From Mytilus californianus (lineage: Eukaryota): a stretch of DNA of 64,000 bases. The notes under the pieces were generated by a model. It saw only the letters and a list, made by a program, of their open reading frames with translations, made no database searches and had not been told where the DNA came from. The stretch lies in the NCBI RefSeq assembly GCF_021869535.1, contig NW_026262745.1:10788001-10852000 (forward strand), given 5' to 3'. How positions within the stretch are numbered: the stretch's first letter is position 1; each line of letters begins with the position of its first letter. A program made the position numbers and the translations under genes. This document shows positions 5,852-52,315 of the stretch, in pieces.

Positions 5852-7809
5852 AATTTCATTTTTATTCATGAAAGGTGAGTTTAAGTGAGTCTGCAGTTAA
5901 AATTATTGTCATGAAATAAATTTTACTTCAATTTCTGTGCTCTCTCTCCTTTTTGTGTCAGGTCAAAAGGTCAGAGACAGAATGTCAACTAACAACAGGT
6001 ATTTATTGATGGGTGCAACAACAGATAGGGTCCCAGGGGAAACTGTGATGATCATAATTTGGAAGTGACCCTAACAATTCTGACAGGAGAGAGAGGAAGA
6101 AATTTTTTTTGTGTTTAAGGCAAAATACAACTTTGATTTTAGTGGGTGACTGTGCCAGGTGATGATCTATAAATGTATTATACACTAAGAAATATCATGA
6201 ATCACTCTACATTCTGTAGCATGTAAAGGGGAAAAGACAAAGCCCTCATTATCCTGAAGTTCATATGAATAAAAGGTGTCTGTTTCTGTCAATCAATATG
6301 AGACACTAGCAACCAAATGACAAAAATTTTCAAAAAACATCTAAAGGGCAACATGCAATATTCAACAACTATAGACAGGTTTCAGTATTCAAAGTTGTAA
6401 TATTGTTACATCTGAATTGAAGACTGTATTTGAAATTTCCACACATTTTTATCTATACTTTTTAATCATTATATGAATTATTTAAGGTTATTAAAAATGT
6501 AAATTGGATTGCATACATTGTAACTGCTCTTATCACTAAAAGACTTATACTGGTATAGTGTACTGTATAACACACATGGATGAAATATGCAATTAAGTTT
6601 TCATTATATAAAAAATATTTCAGAGAACATGGAGAAAGGTACATTTAACGCCTATCAGATCATTTCAAAGGCAGATTTTAGGGGTGCAAGGCCCCCTGAT
6701 GGAGCTACACATAAGAGTACAGCATAGACTTTTAACATGTCCCACTCCTACGTTGTCTGACACCCTCCCCCCTTTTCAAAATCCTGGTTCTGCATTTTAT
6801 ATAAAGATAGAGCTATTATGTTCATACAAGCCAAACAATATTCAATAAAAACATAATGGAACATTAAGGAACTAACAATTGCTAATACTATATATATATA
6901 ACTCCTGCTCTGTTCAAGGTTTCAAAATGACCACATGTTCATCCTGGGCACCATTTACAATATAGGGTGTCAAAAAAACATGTGTTGGATCGACTCGGAT
7001 GTGACATTTAGCCCTTACTTCAGACTGTCAACAATATCATTCCAATAAAAATATTGAGGTACAAATTAAACTACACCTTTAATTTCATTTTTATTGCTAT
7101 TGGGCATATCATTTTCTTTTTGTTAGTAGGTTTGATTTGCACAATTCTGGTTACTGTATTTGCTTTGTAATATGCAGTTATCATAGTTACTGTGTACTTA
7201 AAAGTATTTTCCGTTGTAATTCGTCTTTAAAAATTGAATAACCTCTCTGTGGTAACTATTATAGTTTTTGACGACAAATTCTTTTTAAAATTCAGGGTCC
7301 ATTTATTTTTATAATTATAATCCCTTGTTGTCTTGTTTCAAAGTATAAATGCATGAATACTATGCGTTTTGTGTAATTACTTTCCATTCAATTCAAGAGT
7401 TTTTATAGAGCGTTTTTGTGAACGATTTTTTATTCCACGGTGACAGCTTGTATTTTTTCCATGGCAAGATATCTCCGACATGAAGTATTTTTCATACATA
7501 TTTTATGCTGAATAAGACTACATTTTTAAATGAATCAGAAAAAAGAAAATTTATTTATGCATTTGTATAAGAATTAAATTATACTGCGTTTCACATGTTC
7601 AGCTGCAGTTGGTTTTTAAAATGCAATTTTTACACGTGCTAACCTCGATGTTTATCTAGCATGATCTTTACACTACACAAGTATAGAAACATCTTCATTT
7701 TGTAAACATTGAAAAAAAATATTTACATTGCCGAAGGCAAATTATGTCAAGAATCTAGGGCATAATATAATTGATGATTTTTGGACAGTTAACTTCCGCG
7801 GATTCTCAC

Positions 7810-16022: not shown

Positions 16023-19000
16023 TTATATGTTCGCACTCTTGATCTACCAACCACCGATATGTACCAACTCACTACAATTAGAACATATCCAGACTAGTAG
16101 AATTTACATATAAACAGTATATTACAAAATTCTGAATATCAAATACACAAAACCAAAACCTTAGATCAGTTATATACAAAAGAGTTGGACATTTGTGATG
16201 GTCGCAGGTGCTCCAGACTCGAAAGCAGTTGATGCAACTAACCCCACTGAGGTGATTTAGAACTTGACCTGTGGTATTGACACGTTTTTATTGTTTGCTG
16301 ACCTCTGTTTGTCTTTTGGGAATGTTTGTATCTTTAATTGCTGTGACAATGACGTATTAGACTATCTCCTTTCATTCATATTCAAAATAAGAGCGATAGT
16401 CAAGTTCATGTTCCGTGTTAACCTACCTTTGCATGGAATCATTACACTCTACGTTGTTGTTCATGGTAAAATTTCCTGTAAATATAATAATGATAATGAT
16501 GATAATAATAATAGTAATAATAATGATACAGTGTAATAATAACGATGCTAACAATTGTAACAATTGTGATGTTGATGATGATGCTGATGATGACAATACA
16601 ACATCATGAAATAAATTCTCGAATAACATATTTTTCTCTGTTATCCAACAGAAGTTTGCTGAATTAAAAAAGATGTATTTTTGCAGTCGTCCTTGATCAC
16701 TTTATATGCTTAATCTATTTGTTGTGAGTTCAAAATTGGTTCTGTATTTTTTTCACTTATGACTTTTCATAGTGAAGTTCACAGCAACTGAAAACAATGA
16801 TGAATCATTGAATTGGACTTTCACCTATTACGGTGTGTACCAAGTCAGGAATATGGCAGTTGTTATCAGACAGTCCGGTTTTTTTGTACGTTGGCGTTTG
16901 CTTTTGTTGTAGTTCAGTGTTTTTTGTTTGATCCGTTATTTTTCTCTTATAGTTGATGTGTTTCCCTCGGTTTTAGTTTGTTACCCGGATTTGTTTTCTC
17001 TTAATCGAATTATGACTATTGAACAGCGGTATACTACTGTTGCCTTTATTTATATCATAGCTTTCTTTACGTTATCCTTACCGCGATGTCCACTTTAAAA
17101 ACAGAGGAATTAAATGATAATTAGCAACAATACAAATGAAAATGCTGATCGTAGCTGGCATTTACTTTACAGACTTAAGTCTTTTTCTTTATAAAACCAT
17201 ATTGTTCCCAAGATGTGATTTGTCAAATATCACGTATTTACATCTTATCTTATGTCTGTGTATTATATGAAAGTCGGACACTTACCATCTTTTGATTTGT
17301 ACCTCCTTCGTTGGTAAATGAAACATAACAAAACTAATGCTATTACCACACATGAACCAACTGTAGTTACAACTAGGGTTACCAAAATGTGGAATTCTGA
17401 AAAAAAAGTTTGGCATCTAAATTGTAACTGTACAAATCTTTAATCAATGCTTAATAATTGGTTCTCGATTGTGACAAAACTTTTCTCGTCCAGTAGCAAC
17501 ATACCCTTTTCACTTTATAGGGTTTATAACTATATATTTTATGATTAATGATATTTCGGTCGATGTAAAAGTTTTATTTCACCAGCATTTACGACTTAAT
17601 TTTACCATACCTTTTATTTTTAGTGACGTTGGATTTGCTTGTATGCTGTCTGTTACTGGATGTTCCGTTCTGAAAATAATAAGATACTCATTTGTATACG
17701 CCATGCTTATGTCAGTACCTTAGAAAAAATCAATACTTGCATTTAATGTATAAGGCCTAATATAAGGATGTAAGGATCAGAATTGACAAGAGCCATTATT
17801 TGACAATAGTTTACTGCAATTAAAAAATAGTAGAAATCTTCAATAATTTCAAAATCACGTTAGTTATTATCATGACACTTCTGTTTAAAAATGTCAGCGA
17901 AATCATAAAACATGTCGAACTAGGCGTGTTTTACCTAAATTGCAATTTTAAACTGATCTTTAGTGAAATAAGTCAAAAATCTAAACAAATTCAGGTACTC
18001 TCTAAAGTATAACTGAAACACGTTTCACGTACTAGTAATCATGGCAATTAAGAAATCTGTAAATACTGTTCTTGTTTACAACTGTGCTGCCTATAGCGCA
18101 ACTGACGAGTCTTTGGAAGACTAAAACGCAACTGGCATACTAAGTTATATACCTCGCATCTTTGGTGAAAATCTCAACCATTGGGGGCAATTAAGACAAT
18201 TAACTTTTATGAAAATTGATAACATTCAATCCTTTTTTCTTAATCTGTTTTTTTTAGCAACCATTGCTATTTGATGGTCTTTTAGTATCATATTACTAAG
18301 TTAATTAGACTTACTTGATTATAGCACCACATTTTACATCCGATATTGATGTACATTGTTCTATTTCGTAACGATTCTGTTGGGAACAGTTATTACATGG
18401 TTTACAGTCGAAATCCCGTCGGTCATTATAGTATCCAGTAGTACAAAGTACACATGGTGTACATGTAAGTGCTCCGTGTGCTTGATCCCATTTTATTTTT
18501 TCGTTAACCTGAAGAAATGAAATTAAGCTAAATGATTAATTTATAAACTTATTTCTAAAGATTTGCAATGCAAAATTGAGATATAATACAAAATAACCTA
18601 GACAAATACGTTTTATTTTACATAGGATTTTTTCTCACCATGTCCAGACTACCTATGTTATTAATTGTGATCAGTGAAAGGTCTGCGATTCCTCGTTATG
18701 TTTTATATTTAGTCATTCATTCTACGATAAGTAATTGACTCAGCTTAAAATGAAGTGTTTCTGTGTCCCGTCTTTTCTATAGCATGATAGACTCACAGTA
18801 AACAAAAGTTTTCTAAAAAAAATTCATTTCTATTTGTTCTTCATTCAAAGTTTTCTAATCTAAACTCTTAAAGCTAAGAAATTAATTATCAAGAAATCGA
18901 ACAGTACCAAAAAAGTCGAAACTGGAGAAAAATAGAAATATGTTGTCTGAAGATGAATACGGAAACGTTTTCTTCAAGTCCTCCAACCGAAACCATAATA

Positions 19001-29308: not shown

Positions 29309-29953
29309 ATATTTTGTATTGACTTACAATATGTTTTTGTTTATCTACGAATTTATTTGTGATGCATAAGACGTAGCATTAGAGAACTCGTGACCCTTTT
29401 GTAGCCCCCCCCCCCCTTCCCCCTTCTCCCCCTGTTTTTGGCCGGTTCTTTAGCTTTCTGTATAGTACTTAGTGGACAGTTGTTTGTAGTTTCTCAATTC
29501 TATTTTGACCATGTTATTGTTTGTCTTTCTTTAAATTCTGGTTATTGATTGCCGCTAAAAGGACGTGTGTTTATGGACTATTTGATGTCAAAAGCATTTC
29601 ATATCAATAAAAGGATGTTTATGTCAACGTGACAAAAAAGAATAACCAACACAAAGAATGTCAGACTACGTGTAGAGGTTTACGTAAGTCTAAATTGCTC
29701 GTATTTTAGAAAAGTTATCAATACATTTATCAGATTGTCAAACCTCTGCCACCAACAGCAGATCGATGAAGGATATATTACCATTGAAGAAGTGCCTAGT
29801 TTTTGATAGGCACATGAACAATCGTCTTGGTTAAACTAGTTTTTATTTTTAGAATCGTCTCGTTTGACTTTGTTGTTTTCTTTGTTGTTGCTATGTTTGT
29901 CGTTGGTATTGTTTTTTATATTTCAAGTTAAAACTTCCATTGCATTGCGAACA

Positions 29954-31280
29954 GTAAAATTGAGAATGGAAATAGGTAATGTGTCAAAGAGACAACAACC
30001 CGACCATCGAGCAGACAACAGCCGAAGGCCACCAATGGGTCTTCAATGCAGCGAGAAACTCCCGCACCCGGAGGCGTCCTGCAGCTGGCCCCTAAACAAA
30101 TATGTATACTAGTTCAGTGATAATGGACGTCATACTAAACTCCAAATTATACACAAGAAACTAAAATTTAAAATGATACAAGGCTAAAAAGGGCCAGAGG
30201 CTCCTGACTTGGGACAGGCGCAAAAATGCGGCGGGGTTAAACATGTTTTTTGAGATCTTAACCCTCCCCCTATACCTCTAGCCAATGTAGAAAAAACAAA
30301 CGTACAACAGTACGAACAGTAAAACTCAGTTTAAGAGAAGTCCGAGTCCGATGTCAGAATAGGAAACAAAAGAAAATAAACAAAATGACAATAATACATA
30401 AATAACAACAGACTACTAGCAGTAACTGACATGCCAGCTCCAGACCTCAATTAAACTGATTGAAAGATTATGTCTTCATCATATGAATATCAGGCACAAT
30501 CCCTCATGTAAGGAGTTAAGTATTATACCATCATAAAATATATGAGAAGAACATAACCCGTGTCATGCCAACAACTGGTTTTAGAATAAATCTGTTAATT
30601 CCGATGCAAAGACCCTATAAGTGAATCAATATTAAAGCCAAAATATGCAATCTTTAATGACCTGACAACAGTATCGTAACTATATCCCTTCTTAATAAGT
30701 CTGTTTAAAGGTTTTGTTAGCTTTTGAGGTGAATACTGACATTTTTGTGCTTTGTAAAGAATATTACCATAAAAGATTGGATGTGAAATACCTGAACGTA
30801 TAAGATGTCTGCATGTTGAGTTATATTTACGAATGATGTCCTTATACCGATGATAAAATTTAGTAAATGTTTTGACTAGTTTATGATATCGATAACCCTG
30901 GTGTAATAATTTTTCAGTAATAAATAAATTTCTCTCGCCAAAATCTAATACGTTGTTACATACACGAGCGAATCGTACAAGTTGAGATATATAAACACCA
31001 TAAGATGGTGACAAGGGAACGTCACCATCTAAAAATGGATAATTAACGATAGATAATGAAAAATCATCTGTTTTATCATAAATTTTGTATTAAGCTTCCC
31101 GTTAATGAAATAGATATCAAGATCGAGGAAAGGACAGTGGTCATTGTTAGTATTAGCTTTATTTAAAGTAAGTTCAACAGGATAAATTTCTTTAGTATAC
31201 ATACTGAAGTCGTCATTATTGAGAGCCAATATATCATCCAAATATCTAAAAGTATTGTTAAATTTTTGTATCTTTGTAAT
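29954..31280 (-). mobile_element. 5'-truncated Penelope-like element (Naiad-type RT C-terminus plus 3' non-coding region)
   Basis: FNNTFRYLDDILAL...CPFLDLDI and (frameshift) ...SPSYGVYISQLVRFARVC...HRN* ending at 30595; the 3' region recurs inverted at 43790-44235. Confidence 0.9.
30193..30282 (-). ncRNA. Twister-like ribozyme, type-P5 permutation
   Basis: P5 GCUAGAGGU/GCCUCUGGC, P2 GGGG/CCCC, GAGGG, U-AA site (30239/30238), GC, P3 CGCA/UGCG, P4 CCUG/CAGG, L4 UCCCAAGU. Matches the rice twister core as I remember it (UAA...GC...CCGG UCCCAAGC CCGG...GAGGG). Confidence 0.75.
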
Positions 31281-31984: not shown

Positions 31985-32262
31985 AGAATATTAATAATAT
32001 TAAAATAATGTCTGTTTTGTTCACGCATCGTTGTAAATATAACGAAATTTGATAAGACTGTCGTACAAGTGAGAGGTTTAGCGCTATAAAACCAGGTTCA
32101 ATCCACCATTTTCTACATTTGAAAATGCCTGTACCAAGTCAGGAATATGACAGTTGTTGTCCATTCGTTTGATGTGTTTTGTCATTTGATTTTGCCATGT
32201 GATTAGGGACTTTCCGATTGAATTTTCCTCGGAGTTCAGTATTTTTGTGATTTTACTTTTTA
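31985..32262 (+). mobile_element. Non-autonomous repeat family 2 carrying a twister-like motif
   Basis: Relatives at 20405-20535 and 50770-50968. Confidence 0.85.
32058..32153 (+). ncRNA. Twister-like ribozyme, type-P5
   Basis: P5 CUGUCGUA/UAUGACAG, P2 UCC/G(U)GA, GAGGU pairing with L4 UACCAAGU, AC/GU pseudoknot, P3 CAUUUUC/GAAAAUG, P4 CCUG/CAGG, site C32099-A32100. Confidence 0.7.
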
Positions 32263-43789: not shown

Positions 43790-44235
43790 GCATGTCAGTA
43801 ACTGCTAGTAGTCTTTGATCAATTTATGTTGATCATTGTCATTTTGCGTAGTTTCTTCTGATACCTATTCTAACATTGAACACGGACTTCTATTTACTGA
43901 GGTTAATTGTGCGTATTGCTGTGTGTTTGTTTATTCCACATTGGCTAGAAGTATAGGGGATGATTGAGATCTCACAAAAGATGTTAAACCCCCCCCGCAT
44001 ATTTATCTCCTGTCCCAAGTCATGAACCTCTAGCCGTTGTATATGTATTGAGATTTCCATTTCGCTGAACTAGTACACATATTGTTTAGGACCCAGCTGT
44101 AACCTACCTCCAGAGCGGAATTTTCACACTGCATTGAAGACCCATTGGTGGTCTTGTGTTGTTTTCTGCTCTTTGCAATTGGTCGGTTGTATTGAGTGTT
44201 GTATATTTGACACATTCCCCGTTGACATTCTTTAT
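43790..44235 (+). mobile_element. Solo 3' fragment of the PLE at 29954-31280, with decayed twister motif
   Basis: Reverse complement of about 29960-30450; GAGGG lost, P5 strands and L4 TCCCAAGT retained. Confidence 0.8.
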
Positions 44236-44514
44236 TCTAAAGAAATTGAATTATTAGATACTGATGCTGACTTGGGACAGACAAAAAAAATGTGACGGCG
44301 TCAAACATGTTTGTGAGTGCTTAAATAATGCCTTAACCTGGGTTAGTGGTGATACAGAAAAAACAAACGAACAAACTGTAAAAAAGCAGTTAAAATTAAA
44401 GAACCTTTGCGAGCACTCTCACATACCCCCCGCCCTCACAATGTTACTGGGCAAACAAAATCTCAACAGATTCCTAATTTCAAAGACTCATAACTCTACA
44501 AAAGTCTAGTGATA

Positions 44515-45304: not shown

Positions 45305-47500
45305 TTAACTCATCAGATGGATACAAATAGAAATAAGTAAAGGTTTTAAGTAATTTGTGGTAACGAAATCTCCGACTTAATAATTTCCAGTAATACATAG
45401 ATTACGTTCATTGAAATCCAAAACGTCACAACATACACGGGCATAGCTAACGAATTATGATATATAAACATCGTAAGATGGTGCCAAAGGAACATCACCG
45501 TCCAAAAAGTAAAATTAGCAATAAGGAACGAAAAATTGTCCCTTTTGTCGTAAATTTTAGTGTTGATTTTCCCGTGTAAAACTGAAATATCTTAATCTAG
45601 GAAATTTATTACTGTTTATATTTGATTTATTAAAAGTAACTACCTTTGAGTAAATTTCGGCACTATTTTTAGAGATTTCTTGATTATTTAACGAAAAAAT
45701 ATCATCAAGATAAGGGTAAGTGTTGTTGAGTGTATGAATTTAATGCAATTTAGACAGGTCTTTACTGAGTTTGGTCATAAACTGTGATTCATAACAGTAC
45801 AAGAACAAGTCTGCTATTAAAGGGGGGCAATTGGTGCCCATAGGAATACCTACAACCTGTCGATAAACTTTATTGCCGAAACGTACATAAATATTATCCA
45901 GGAGAAAATTAACAGCTTCAACCATCTCATCACACCTCTAGTAAGTATATCTAGCATATTACCTATCTCAATAGTGAAGAAGGCTTTAAATGAGTTGCAG
46001 CAAATATATTTGCATTCAGATTTACCAAACGACCATTTAACTAAATAGGAAAACTTTTGTTTGATAAGATTGTGTGGAAGTGTAGTGTAAAGAGTTGATA
46101 AGTCAAAACTGTCAACAGAATCAAAAGAACCATCAAAAGCACGTAATTTATATAAAACATCCAAAGAATTTTTTCCACTAAAAAATAGTTAATTCCAATA
46201 TTTTCATATATTTTATTACAAAAGTTGATGATAAGTTCTTTGATAGTAGTTAAGGAATTAGTTAAAAGCACTGAAAGATTAGTTGTAGAACACTTACTAG
46301 AGGCCAAGATGAAACGATATTTTACTGGATTTTTGTGTAGTTTATATAACTAATACATAGTAGGGACCTTCAAATGTTCAGAAGAGGACTTAAGCTGTGA
46401 TGTGGTTTTGATATGATTGTTTACTATATTATGACTCTCTGTGGAGCGCACGATGTAGAATAATTCAAAATTTCATTCTTAAGAACGTCCGTGTAGTGTT
46501 TATGGCATACCACCACCCCATTGTTGGCTGCTTTGTCGGCCTGTACAAACACAAACCGCTTCTAAAGTACTTGAAGCTTGTTTCTTATTCTCTAGAAATA
46601 GGCGTATTATGTACTCTTTTATTTATTTCTGAATTATTTTCAAAATGTGATATTCGAATATCTACAACATTCATACATTTATAAAAACAAAAATGAAGAG
46701 ATTTTTTACCAGATTTTCCCCATTTACATCAATTTTTACAATACGATGAAAGAGCGTCTTTTGTGACCTGACGACACTGTTTCCAATCTATTTTAGATGG
46801 CGGACGATATTTTGGTCCTTTTTTCAAAATGTTTTTAACTACTCGGTCTTGAACTATATTGAGCTCACACTCCTTGAAAATATCATCAAGATAAGGGTAA
46901 GTGTTGTTGAGTGCATCAATTAAATGCAATTTAGACAGGTCTTTATTGAGTTTGGTCATAAACTGTGATTCATAACAGTACAAGAACAAGTCTGCTATTA
47001 AAGGGGCGCAATTGGTGCCCATAGGAATACCTACAACCTGTCGATAAACTTTATTGCCGAAACTAATTGTTACTAATTGATATTTTACACAGTTTACATA
47101 ATGATTGATGTCTACCATTGGTTTTAAATTTAGATAGAAGATCATCAGGTGGATAATTTGTACGAATTTTAGTTCGTTGATTTCGATTGATACGTTTGTC
47201 ATGAGACCTATTATATTACGTTGTCTTCTACATGTTCTATCAACAATATTCATGATATCAATAGAAGAAGTTTTAGATATGTTCCCTTGTCCCATTATAT
47301 TGTCATTTAGACCCAGGAGATATGTTGTCTGCAGTCGTTTAATCCAAGACATTTCGACAATTTTACGGGAATCTTCAAATTGTTTATGCGATTGCCCTTG
47401 TTGTTTGTGGATCGCTTCCAGTGGTTGGAATCTTGTGATTGTGTTTACCTAAATGTTGGTAGATTATACTTAGAACGCCTAAGTACAGGCGCGATTGTGT
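45305..47500 (-). pseudogene. Degraded Naiad-type Penelope-like element (GIY-YIG endonuclease N-terminal to RT)
   Basis: 5' to 3' on minus: EN end (FQPLEAI...EMSWIKRLQTTYLLGLND), KGPKYRPP, ASSKCSTT, FDLSTLYTTLPH, RQVVGIPMGTNC, YLDD, PSYDVYIS; many frameshifts and stops. EN-before-RT order defines Naiad/Chlamys PLEs (Craig et al. 2021). Confidence 0.88.
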
Positions 47501-50769: not shown

Positions 50770-50968
50770 AGTAGGGGTTAAGTTAGCTATGAAACCAGGT
50801 TTAATCCACCATTTTCTACATAAGGAAATGCCTGTACCAAGTCAGGAATATGACAGTCGTTTTCCATTCTTTTGATGAGTTTGAACTTTTGATTTTGCCA
50901 TTTGATAATTAGGGACTTTCCGTTTTGAATTTTCTTTGGAGTTCGGTATATTTGTTATTTTACTTTTA
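50770..50968 (+). mobile_element. Repeat family 2, twister motif damaged at its 5' end
   Basis: AAACCAGGTTTAATCCACC...GCCTGTACCAAGTCAGGAATATGACAG intact; GAGG and the 5' P5 strand lost. Confidence 0.8.
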
Positions 50969-51224: not shown

Positions 51225-51572
51225 CACCACTGTCCCAGGTTAGAGGAGGGTTTGACACCTTCAAAATTGTTTCACCCCGCCATATTCTGTATGTGCCTGT
51301 ACCAAGTCAGGAGTTGGTAACTCAGTGGTTGTCGTCTGTTGTTGTATATCAAATTTGTTTTTCGTTTCATTATTTTGTACATAAATAAGGCCGTTAGTTT
51401 TCTCGTTTGAATTGTTTTGTCATTTGGGGGCCTTTTATAGCTGACTATGCGATATTGGTTTTGCTAGTTGTTGAAGGTCGAACGGTGGCCTATAGTTGTT
51501 AATTTCTTTGTCATTTGGTCTCTTGTGGAGAGTTGTCTCATAGGCAATCATACCATATCTTTTTATTTTTAC
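51225..51572 (+). mobile_element. Repeat family 1, near full length, with decayed twister motif at 51235-51318
   Basis: GAGGAGGG...TTTCACCCCGCC...GCCTGTACCAAGTCAGGA, then the family 1 body in reverse complement. Confidence 0.8.
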
Positions 51573-51977: not shown

Positions 51978-52315
51978 GTTTAATAAATAAAGGCAACAGT
52001 TGTATACCGCTGTTCAATAGTCATGATTCGATTAAGCAAAAACAAATCCGGGTAACAAACTAAAACCGAGGAAACACATCAACTATAAGAGGAAAACAAC
52101 GGAACAACAGAAACTCTGAACTACAACAAAAGCAAACGCCAACATACATAGAAAAACGGACTGTAGATAACAACTGCCATATTCCTGACTTGGTACAGGA
52201 CATTTTAAGAAAAAATGGTGGGTTGAACCTAAATTAATGGCTAGCCAAACCTCCCGCTAATATGGCAATTTTAAAAATGCCGCTAAAATGACAACACTAC
52301 GTGACAGGAATACAG
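51978..52315 (-). mobile_element. Repeat family 2b
   Basis: Inverted match to 16835-17055, extended through the twister motif. Confidence 0.85.
52174..52268 (-). ncRNA. Twister-like ribozyme, type-P5
   Basis: P5 UUGCCAUAU/AUAUGGCAG, P2 CCC/G(C)GG, GAGGU with L4 UACCAAGU, AC/GU, P3 CAUUUU/AAAAUG, P4 CCUG/CAGG, site C52225-A52224. Confidence 0.7.

What the first reader, a model, noticed from the sequence alone, without database searches (positions are those of the whole stretch)
30193..30282. Twister-like ribozyme in the 3' region of a Naiad-type Penelope-like retroelement
Seen: about 310 nt downstream of the RT stop, sense to the element, the RNA folds by eye into the twister core: P2 CCCC/GGGG, P3, P4 CCUG/CAGG, L4 UCCCAAGU, GAGGG, a U-AA cleavage site, both pseudoknots (CCC/GGG, GC/GU), closed by a 9-bp P5. 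Known: canonical PLEs carry hammerheads in their pseudo-LTRs, while N-terminal-EN Naiads were reported to lack canonical hammerheads (Craig et al. 2021). Inference: this PLE lineage uses a twister instead to process tandem transcripts. I do not know of this pairing being described, but could not check the literature. The Naiad assignment of this copy rests on RT similarity to the EN-RT copy at 45305-47500.
Basis: partly seen in the sequence, partly recalled or inferred. Interest (0 to 1): 0.9.

Follow-up and report, generated by a model that had tools for sequence, protein, structure and literature searches.

The report
Twister ribozyme motif in Naiad retroelements
A 90-base RNA motif with the complete fold of a twister self-cutting ribozyme is a fixed, conserved part of the tail of Naiad "jumping genes", a group published as lacking the ribozyme its relatives carry; the cutting itself has not been shown.

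Summary
Window 30193-30282 (minus strand) has every conserved twister nucleotide, P2, P3, P4, a 9-bp P5 and both pseudoknots. Rfam's Twister-P5 model aligns end to end, but at 23.1 bits it is below its 37.6-bit threshold.

The motif lies 312 nt after the RT stop and 238 nt before the 3' end of a 5'-truncated copy. Full-length copies are 4,020-bp tandem units with Naiad hallmarks: N-terminal GIY-YIG, CxC, DKA, four in-frame UGA codons and a SECIS. They have no hammerhead.

About 30,000 pattern matches occur in this genome, in at least four tail families. Homologous motifs lie 343-569 nt after the RT stop in six other assemblies. Compensatory changes support every helix and both pseudoknots.

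P1 is absent. Two loop-less palindromes replace it, which suggests pairing between two copies, as proposed for the minimal hammerheads of other Penelope-like elements.

Cleavage is not shown. RNA-seq gives no pile-up of ends at the predicted cut, and genomic copies neither start nor end there more often than at control positions.

I found no paper linking twisters to Penelope-like elements. This scan has already flagged the same motif on other pieces of this genome.

Verdict: a real twister-class fold and a new variant of a known kind; activity is likely but unproven.

The parts
29955..31272 (-). 5'-truncated copy of a Naiad-type Penelope-like retroelement (family A). Its 3' end at 29955 is shared by 29 other genomic copies; 5' ends are ragged.
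30595..31014 (-). C-terminal part of the RT ORF (stop codon 30595-30597), 92% identical to the RT of full-length copies
30480..30544 (-). SECIS-like element between the RT stop and the twister. It scores 25.1 bits here, 31.7 bits in a full-length copy, and 39 bits (above threshold) in a second genome.
30193..30282 (-). Whole twister-class motif, type P5 (ends in P5; P3 closed; no P1)
30274..30282 (-). P5 5' strand GCUAGAGGU
30193..30201 (-). P5 3' strand GCCUCUGGC
30267..30270 (-). P2 3' strand GGGG
30262..30266 (-). L1 GAGGG; its last three G pair with CCC of L4 (pseudoknot T1)
30250..30261 (-). Palindrome X (UUAAGAUCUCAA here; UUGAGAUCUCAA in most copies, as RNA reads show T>C at 30259 on the plus strand). 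It sits where the P1 3' strand should be.
30239..30248 (-). Palindrome Y (AAACAUGUUU) ending at the scissile U-1 (30239). It sits where the P1 5' strand should be.
30237..30238 (-). A+1 and A+2 of the conserved U^AA; the predicted cut is between 30239 and 30238
30233..30236 (-). P2 5' strand CCCC
30231..30232 (-). GC that pairs with GU at the end of L4 (pseudoknot T2)
30219..30230 (-). P3 hairpin CGC-AUUUUU-GCG
30203..30218 (-). P4 CCUG/CAGG enclosing L4 UCCCAAGU
29955..30192 (-). 3' tail of the element downstream of the twister (238 nt). It is present in all truncated copies.

Best explanation
The 90 nt are a circularly permuted (type P5) twister-class self-cleaving ribozyme. It is an integral, selected part of the 3' UTR (and so of the terminal repeats and tandem junction regions) of a clade of selenoprotein-coding Naiad Penelope-like retroelements.

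Shown: the fold, its conservation and its fixed place after the RT stop.

Inferred:
1. The RNA cuts itself between U30239 and A30238, leaving a 2',3'-cyclic phosphate and a 5'-OH, 284 nt before the element's 3' end.
2. The helix next to the cut (P1) is replaced by two self-complementary segments. Efficient cutting therefore needs two copies to pair, either two RNAs or two units of one tandem transcript. A single-unit RNA stays intact as the template for target-primed reverse transcription, while multimeric or read-through RNA is cut to unit length.
3. In this it plays the part that the minimal, dimer-dependent hammerheads play in other PLE clades.
For: Fold:
- Rfam Twister-P5 aligns full-length with all conserved nucleotides.
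- On an unfitted MAFFT alignment of 27 copies, the twister structure with both pseudoknots has 80.6% of cells paired. Column shuffles give 72.4 +/- 0.9% (0 of 500 reach the observed value). Sliding the partners gives 31-45%. The covariation score is 0.285 against 0.162.
- On my own structural parse, 90% of 606 cells are paired against 72% in shuffles.
- P5 is perfect over its inner 5 bp in 17 of 27 copies, against 5% with a cross-family partner.

Selection:
- Only the ~90-nt motif aligns between tail families A-D.
- Ten lineages from seven assemblies keep it 270-570 nt after the RT stop, with 159 of 168 cells paired.
- Pair types vary in P2.1 (5 types), P3, P4, T1.1 (CG/AU/GU), T1.3 (CG/AU) and T2.2 (UG/UA/GC).
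- U/C-AA, GAGGK and the L4 core are kept throughout.

Element identity: 4,020-bp tandem units with GIY-YIG, CxC, DKA and RT, and no hammerhead.

Palindromes:
- Intact members of every lineage have an even, loop-less palindrome directly after GAGGK, and most have a second one ending at or next to U-1. The sequences differ but the symmetry is the same.
- The insert folds at about -3 kcal/mol alone and at -16 to -21 kcal/mol as a homodimer.

Precedents:
- Twister variants with relaxed or missing P1 cleave in vitro and in vivo (PMC8501958).
- Metazoan PLE hammerheads have a palindromic, unstable helix next to the cut and are thought to act as dimers (PMC4209133).
Against: - There is no direct sign of cutting. 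In four RNA-seq runs, reads span the site and no excess of molecule ends is reported at 30238/30239. Most of those reads are read-through RNA from many truncated copies on both strands, so this test is weak.
- Copies that begin exactly at A+1 number about 20. That is no more than begin 6 nt upstream (about 26), though more than 4 nt downstream (about 5).
- Only 4 copies end at U-1.
- The Rfam score is below threshold.
- There is no canonical P1.
- Some lineages have a U-U in T1, a 2-3 bp P2, or C instead of A at L4 position 5.
- The two-palindrome dimer does not reproduce the topology of a normal P1.
Confidence: 0.6

Rival explanations
1. The RNA has a twister-derived fold, but it is kept for another job and cuts little or not at all. 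It could be a recognition or anchoring structure for the element's RT in the 3' UTR, or, through its palindromes, an RNA dimerisation site that helps template switching and the formation of tandem copies.
For: - No RNA ends at the predicted cut.
- Copies neither start nor end at the cut more than at control places.
- All retrotransposed copies carry the intact motif plus the 238-nt tail, so the templates were uncut.
- P1 is missing and the Rfam score is sub-threshold.
- The core deviates in some lineages.
Against: - The nucleotides around the scissile bond (N-AA) and the whole catalytic core are kept across lineages whose RTs are only about 50% identical. A mere scaffold would be freer to drift.
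- P1-less twisters are active.
- The same uncut-template paradox holds for the hammerheads of other PLEs.
Confidence: 0.27
2. The twister is a separate selfish module (a ribozyme-bearing tail or non-autonomous element) that has spread among unrelated retroelement tails and merely rides on Naiads.
For: - At least four tail families with unrelated flanks share only the motif.
- Most copies are short tails with no RT nearby.
- Craig et al. raise the same idea for hammerheads.
Against: - Wherever an RT is adjacent, it is a PLE/Naiad-type RT and the motif lies at a similar distance after its stop. This holds in this genome (families A, B, C) and in six other assemblies.
- Ragged 5' ends with a fixed 3' end show that the short copies are 5'-truncated elements, not distinct units.
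Confidence: 0.1
3. Chance resemblance, or a decayed relic with no conserved structure.
For: Rfam score below the gathering threshold; nothing found in whole-window scans.
Against: About 30,000 matches against about 300 in the control, covariation in all helices and both pseudoknots, and conserved position across assemblies.
Confidence: 0.02

Closest known systems
Type-P5 twister ribozymes (Rfam RF02684; class described by Roth et al. 2014)
   Same: Same conserved core (GAGGG, U^AA, GC, GUCCCAAG), P2, P4, optional P3, ends in P5 and two pseudoknots. The model aligns over its full length.
   Different: There is no P1 stem; a 21-24-nt insert with two palindromes stands in its place. The score is below the family threshold. 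The host is an animal retrotransposon with about 10^4 copies. Variant L4/L1 pairs occur (UACC/GGU, UGCC/GGU, UCCA/UGG).
[quoted passage not shown] 2021, PMC8501958); twisters at 5' ends of RTE elements mentioned as unpublished in PMC7761336
   Same: A twister with a weak or absent P1 built into a retrotransposon; there it was shown to cleave.
   Different: There the ribozyme sits at the very 5' end, and the cut defines the element's terminus next to the target-site duplication. Here it sits in the 3' UTR, 284 nt before the 3' end, in a different retroelement class (PLE), and copy ends do not coincide with the cut.
Minimal hammerhead ribozymes in the pseudo-LTRs of canonical Penelope-like elements (Cervera and de la Pena 2014, PMC4209133; Lunse et al. 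2017)
   Same: Same kind of host element, same place (near the 3' end, in the terminal repeat) and massive copy number. The helix next to the cut is replaced by palindromic sequence, which implies action in pairs.
   Different: A different ribozyme class with an unrelated fold. It is found in the N-terminal-EN Naiad clade, which was reported to lack hammerheads.
HDV-like ribozymes of R2, RTE, L1Tc and related non-LTR elements
   Same: A self-cleaving RNA as a fixed part of a retrotransposon transcript.
   Different: A different fold; these sit at the 5' end and release the element from a co-transcript.

Membership tests
Twister ribozyme (Rfam clan CL00120) | Highly conserved core nucleotides: GAGGG, U-AA at the cut, GC, and L4 UCCCAAG | tested here: met
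   All are present in the window copy and aligned by the Rfam model. They are kept, with paired variants, in 10 lineages.
Twister ribozyme (Rfam clan CL00120) | Helices P2 and P4 (plus optional P3 and P5) supported by covariation | tested here: met
   P4 occurs as CCUG/CAGG, AUCG/CGAU and ACCG/CGGU. P3 and P5 differ in every family. P2 is weak (2-3 bp) in families C and D.
Twister ribozyme (Rfam clan CL00120) | Two pseudoknots linking L4 to L1 (T1) and to the GC after P2 (T2) | tested here: met
   T1.1 is CG/AU/GU (U-U in three lineages), T1.3 is CG/AU, and T2.2 is UG/UA/GC. The cross-genome members were found with a descriptor that required part of these pairs.
Twister ribozyme (Rfam clan CL00120) | P1 stem formed by the strands flanking the cut and L1 | tested here: not met
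   There is no complementarity between the two strands; two palindromes stand there instead. P1 is known to be dispensable in some active twisters.
Twister ribozyme (Rfam clan CL00120) | Score at or above the curated Rfam gathering threshold | tested here: not met
   23.1 bits against 37.6 for Twister-P5; 20-21 bits against 67.2 for twister-P1 in a second genome.
Twister ribozyme (Rfam clan CL00120) | Site-specific self-cleavage 5' of the conserved AA | tested here: inconclusive
   No pile-up of RNA ends in 4 RNA-seq runs and no footprint in copy termini. Neither data type is designed to detect cleavage.
Naiad clade of Penelope-like elements (Craig et al. 2021) | GIY-YIG endonuclease N-terminal to the RT in one ORF | tested here: met
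   The L048 reading frame runs IIYLLT..GIQYVGET..LNWIKKLQTVYPLGLN upstream of the RT motifs. Pfam itself gives no hit.
Naiad clade of Penelope-like elements (Craig et al. 2021) | CxC motif in the linker, and DKG changed to DKA | tested here: met
   CNC and PADKAANN are in the L048 ORF; the criteria are quoted from the paper.
Naiad clade of Penelope-like elements (Craig et al. 2021) | Tandem or partial-tandem insertions (pseudo-LTRs), body of 3.4-4.4 kb, very high copy number in bivalves | tested here: met
   4,020-bp period in three arrays; more than 32,000 candidate RT matches.
Naiad clade of Penelope-like elements (Craig et al. 2021) | No canonical hammerhead ribozyme | tested here: met
   No hammerhead family at E<=5 in a full-length unit, and none in the window.
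Selenoprotein-coding Naiads (Craig et al. 2021) | In-frame UGA codons plus a SECIS element in the 3' UTR | tested here: met
   Four in-frame TGA in L048 with the ORF ending in TAA. SECIS_1 scores 31.7 bits after the stop and 39 bits, above threshold, in L081.

The most novel reading that the evidence does not exclude
All endonuclease-bearing Penelope-like elements need a self-cleaving ribozyme that works only when two copies pair. Naiads meet this need with a P1-less 'double twister' instead of the 'double hammerhead'. This would be a convergent swap of ribozyme class that keeps the same logic. Unit-length cut RNAs, with 5'-OH and 2',3'-cyclic phosphate ends, would then be ligated into circles and copied by rolling-circle reverse transcription. 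That would explain the 4,020-bp tandem arrays and the pseudo-LTRs.
Probability: 0.3. Interest if true: 0.9.

Novelty: new variant of a known kind. Interest (0 to 1): 0.78.

Why it matters
Naiads are the most abundant Penelope-like elements in many invertebrate genomes, with tens of thousands of copies here. They were reported as the exception that lacks the hammerhead found in other PLE clades, which cast doubt on whether the ribozyme matters to PLEs at all.

A conserved twister in the same place suggests the need for a self-cleaving RNA is general and that the ribozyme class is interchangeable. It also gives the twister class, whose biology is largely unknown, a second retrotransposon host type and thousands of natural sequence variants.

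The replacement of P1 by two palindromes is a directly testable case of a twister that may act only in pairs.

Tried and rejected
- Rfam at gathering level on the whole window, and at E<=10 on 700 nt, found no twister. Only a 106-nt slice brought the hit out.
- An Rfam family search of the whole 1.65-Gb genome returned nothing, and its control rang nowhere, so it is uninformative.
Diversity within the genome therefore rests on 79 loci plus the window.
- Roth et al. 2014 is not held, and no supplements of Craig et al. are held. I could not scan published Naiad consensus sequences.
- My first regex for L4 (T[ACT]CCAAG) wrongly suggested that several related elements lack the motif. Relaxed descriptors found them with variant L4 and L1.
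- A strict descriptor gave 2 hits per 1.04 Mb of unrelated DNA.
- In three RNA-seq runs, coverage for reads whose first mate lies on the plus strand dips relative to the other orientation over 30182-30322 (ratio 0.4-0.6 against 0.7-1.4 beside it). The fourth run shows no dip, and library strandedness is unknown, so I treat this as inconclusive.
- A simple monomeric P1 pairing, and X-Y pairing, were considered and are not supported by the sequences.

Full report
**Observation**

On the minus strand, window 30282-30193 reads, in order:
- P5 5' strand GCUAGAGGU
- AUA
- P2 3' strand GGGG
- GAGGG
- a 22-nt insert
- U^AA
- P2 5' strand CCCC
- GC
- P3 hairpin CGC-AUUUUU-GCG
- P4 CCUG
- L4 UCCCAAGU
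- P4 CAGG
- A
- P5 3' strand GCCUCUGGC

This is the order of a type-P5 twister.

Rfam's Twister-P5 model aligns over all 58 positions and matches every conserved nucleotide. It scores only 23.1 bits against a threshold of 37.6. The hit appears only when a 106-nt slice is searched, and not in window-wide or 700-nt searches. The low score comes from the long insert where P1 should be and from the P3 insertion.

**What carries it**

The motif is highly repeated:
- The 151 nt around it have at least 632 near-identical genomic candidates.
- In 29 fetched copies the similarity always ends at window 29955, but it begins anywhere from 30322 to 31272. This is the signature of 5'-truncated retrotransposed copies.

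The upstream ORF fragments are a PLE-type RT.

Full-length copies form tandem arrays with a period of exactly 4,020 bp. In one unit (L048 2524-6543) a single reading frame holds, in order, a GIY-YIG-like domain, a CxC motif, DKA and the RT. Craig et al. 2021 give these as the marks of Naiads.

That frame has four in-frame TGA codons and ends with TAA. A SECIS-like element follows the stop, scoring 31.7 bits in L048 and 25.1 bits in the window at 30480-30544. This is therefore a selenoprotein-coding Naiad of the kind that paper described in clams.

No hammerhead or other ribozyme family is detected in the unit.

In the window copy the twister starts 312 nt after the RT stop and ends 238 nt before the 3' end.

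**Is the fold selected?**

Within this genome:
- A loose pattern (GAGG..AA....RC..GUMCCAAGY) matches 30,332 times against 305 for its reversed control.
- The window alone holds seven P4/L4 words.
- The copies fall into at least four tail families, A-D. Each has its own fixed 3' end and ragged 5' ends.
- Only the ~90-nt motif aligns between the families.
- Families A, C and B follow PLE RTs that are 35-53% identical to each other over the aligned parts.

Pairing statistics:
- On an unfitted MAFFT alignment of 27 copies, the twister structure with both pseudoknots gives 80.6% paired cells. Column shuffles give 72.4 +/- 0.9% (0 of 500 reach the observed value). Sliding the partners by 1-3 columns gives 31-45%.
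- On the same alignment there are 51 doubly changed cells against 19 +/- 4, and a covariation score of 0.285 against 0.162.
- On my structural parse, 90% of 606 cells pair against 72% in shuffles.
- P5 differs in every family and is 9-15 bp long, or 5+6 bp in family B. Its complementarity is not an artefact of my choosing the best 5-mer: it is perfect in 17 of 27 copies with its own partner, and in 29 of 546 with a cross-family partner.

**Other genomes**

RT homologues 51-63% identical led to contigs from six other public assemblies.

My first, narrow regex missed several of them. A relaxed descriptor then found a homologous motif 343-569 nt after the RT stop in every lineage that had at least about 600 nt of 3' flank. 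One of them also has a SECIS above Rfam's threshold.

Across ten lineages, 159 of 168 cells pair. The variable positions include both pseudoknots:
- L4 position 2 with L1 position 5: C-G, A-U or G-U (U-U in three lineages)
- L4 position 4 with L1 position 3: C-G or A-U
- L4 position 8 with the first base after P2: U-G, U-A or G-C

Two caveats apply. The descriptor required part of these pairs. The lineages are also related by descent, so cells are not independent events. However, P3, the palindromes and the position after the RT stop were not part of the descriptor, and they agree.

**The missing P1**

Between GAGGK and the scissile U there is no P1. Instead, intact members of every lineage carry an even, loop-less palindrome X directly after GAGGK. 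Examples are UGAGAUCUCA, GGGAUCCC, UAGCGCUA, UGGCUAGCCA, AGGUACCU, AUGGCCAU, GGGCGCCC, CGGGCCCG, AGGCGCCU and UUGGAUCCAA.

Most lineages also carry a second palindrome Y that ends at or next to U-1: AAACAUGUUU, AAACUAGUUU, AAACCGGUUU or AAGCCGGCUU.

In every X the central dinucleotide is self-complementary. A hairpin loop would not need that. The insert alone folds at about -3 kcal/mol, but as a homodimer it folds at -16 to -21 kcal/mol.

Metazoan PLE hammerheads show the same thing at their helix III and are thought to act as dimers. Twister variants with relaxed or absent P1 are active.

I therefore infer, but have not shown, that this twister is meant to work when two copies pair. The two-palindrome arrangement does not simply rebuild a P1 in trans, so its geometry is open.

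**Does it cut?**

Nothing here shows it.

- RNA-seq: in four runs labelled as the same species, reads cover the motif on both strands. No excess of molecule starts or ends is reported at the cut. Many reads run on past 29955 into diverse AT-rich flanks, so most of the signal is passive read-through of truncated copies.
- Copy starts: genomic copies that begin exactly at A+1 number about 20 (9 of the first 100 among 219 matches). About 26 begin 6 nt upstream and about 5 begin 4 nt downstream.
- Copy ends: only 4 copies end at U-1.

The RNAs that were reverse-transcribed therefore carried an uncut motif. The hammerheads of other PLEs pose the same puzzle. It fits a ribozyme that is silent in single-unit RNA.

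**Literature**

- Craig et al. 2021 report that Naiads lack canonical hammerheads, and they do not mention twister.
- Twisters are known at the 5' ends of Perere-3/RTE non-LTR elements.
- Full-text searches found no paper joining twister with Penelope-like elements or bivalves.
- The scan's own notebook shows that the same motif was already flagged and followed up on other pieces of this genome, with similar conclusions. I treated those notes as leads and repeated the tests here.

**Verdict**

This is a real, selected twister-class fold in Naiad tails (about 0.9). Self-cleavage is likely but unproven (about 0.6). Pair-dependence is plausible (about 0.35). It is a new variant of a known kind.

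Noticed in passing
window 30480-30544 (-); L048 3057, 3150, 3183, 4458 and 5955-6019; L081 4674-4741: The element is a selenoprotein-coding Naiad. The EN-RT frame of a full-length copy has four in-frame TGA codons and ends in TAA. A SECIS follows the stop; it scores above Rfam's threshold in a second genome.
   Followed up: partly
window 32128-32143 (+), 44009-44024 (+), 44266-44281 (-), 50831-50846 (+), 51296-51311 (+), 52184-52199 (-), and a 5'-truncated one near 16836 (+): Further twister-bearing retroelement tails of families A, B, C and D lie in the same 64 kb. Several are decayed. The one at 44266 (-) lies about 800 nt downstream of the worn EN-RT copy at 45305-47500.
   Followed up: partly
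window 29947-30040: RNA-seq depth is 5-10 times higher over the last ~50-90 nt of the element than over the rest. Hundreds of reads diverge at 30006/30007 into one other consensus sequence. The terminal ~50 nt therefore seem to be shared with another abundant, expressed repeat, possibly a non-autonomous partner that uses the same tail.
   Followed up: no
G000 C13:18.890-18.898 Mb, C1:66.496-66.501 Mb, C165:87.239-87.243 Mb (L047-L049): Head-to-tail arrays of the full-length element occur with a period of exactly 4,020 bp. More than 32,000 candidate RT matches are found genome-wide.
   Followed up: partly
window 29955 and flanks of other copies: RNA reads that run past the element's 3' end continue into diverse AT-rich sequence. 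This fits the (TA)n insertion bias reported for Naiads.
   Followed up: no
L083 3674-3777: A long, near-perfect inverted repeat (hairpin) matches several plant and animal miRNA-precursor models at 44-49 bits, well below their thresholds. It is probably a MITE-like palindrome beside the Naiad copy in another assembly.
   Followed up: no
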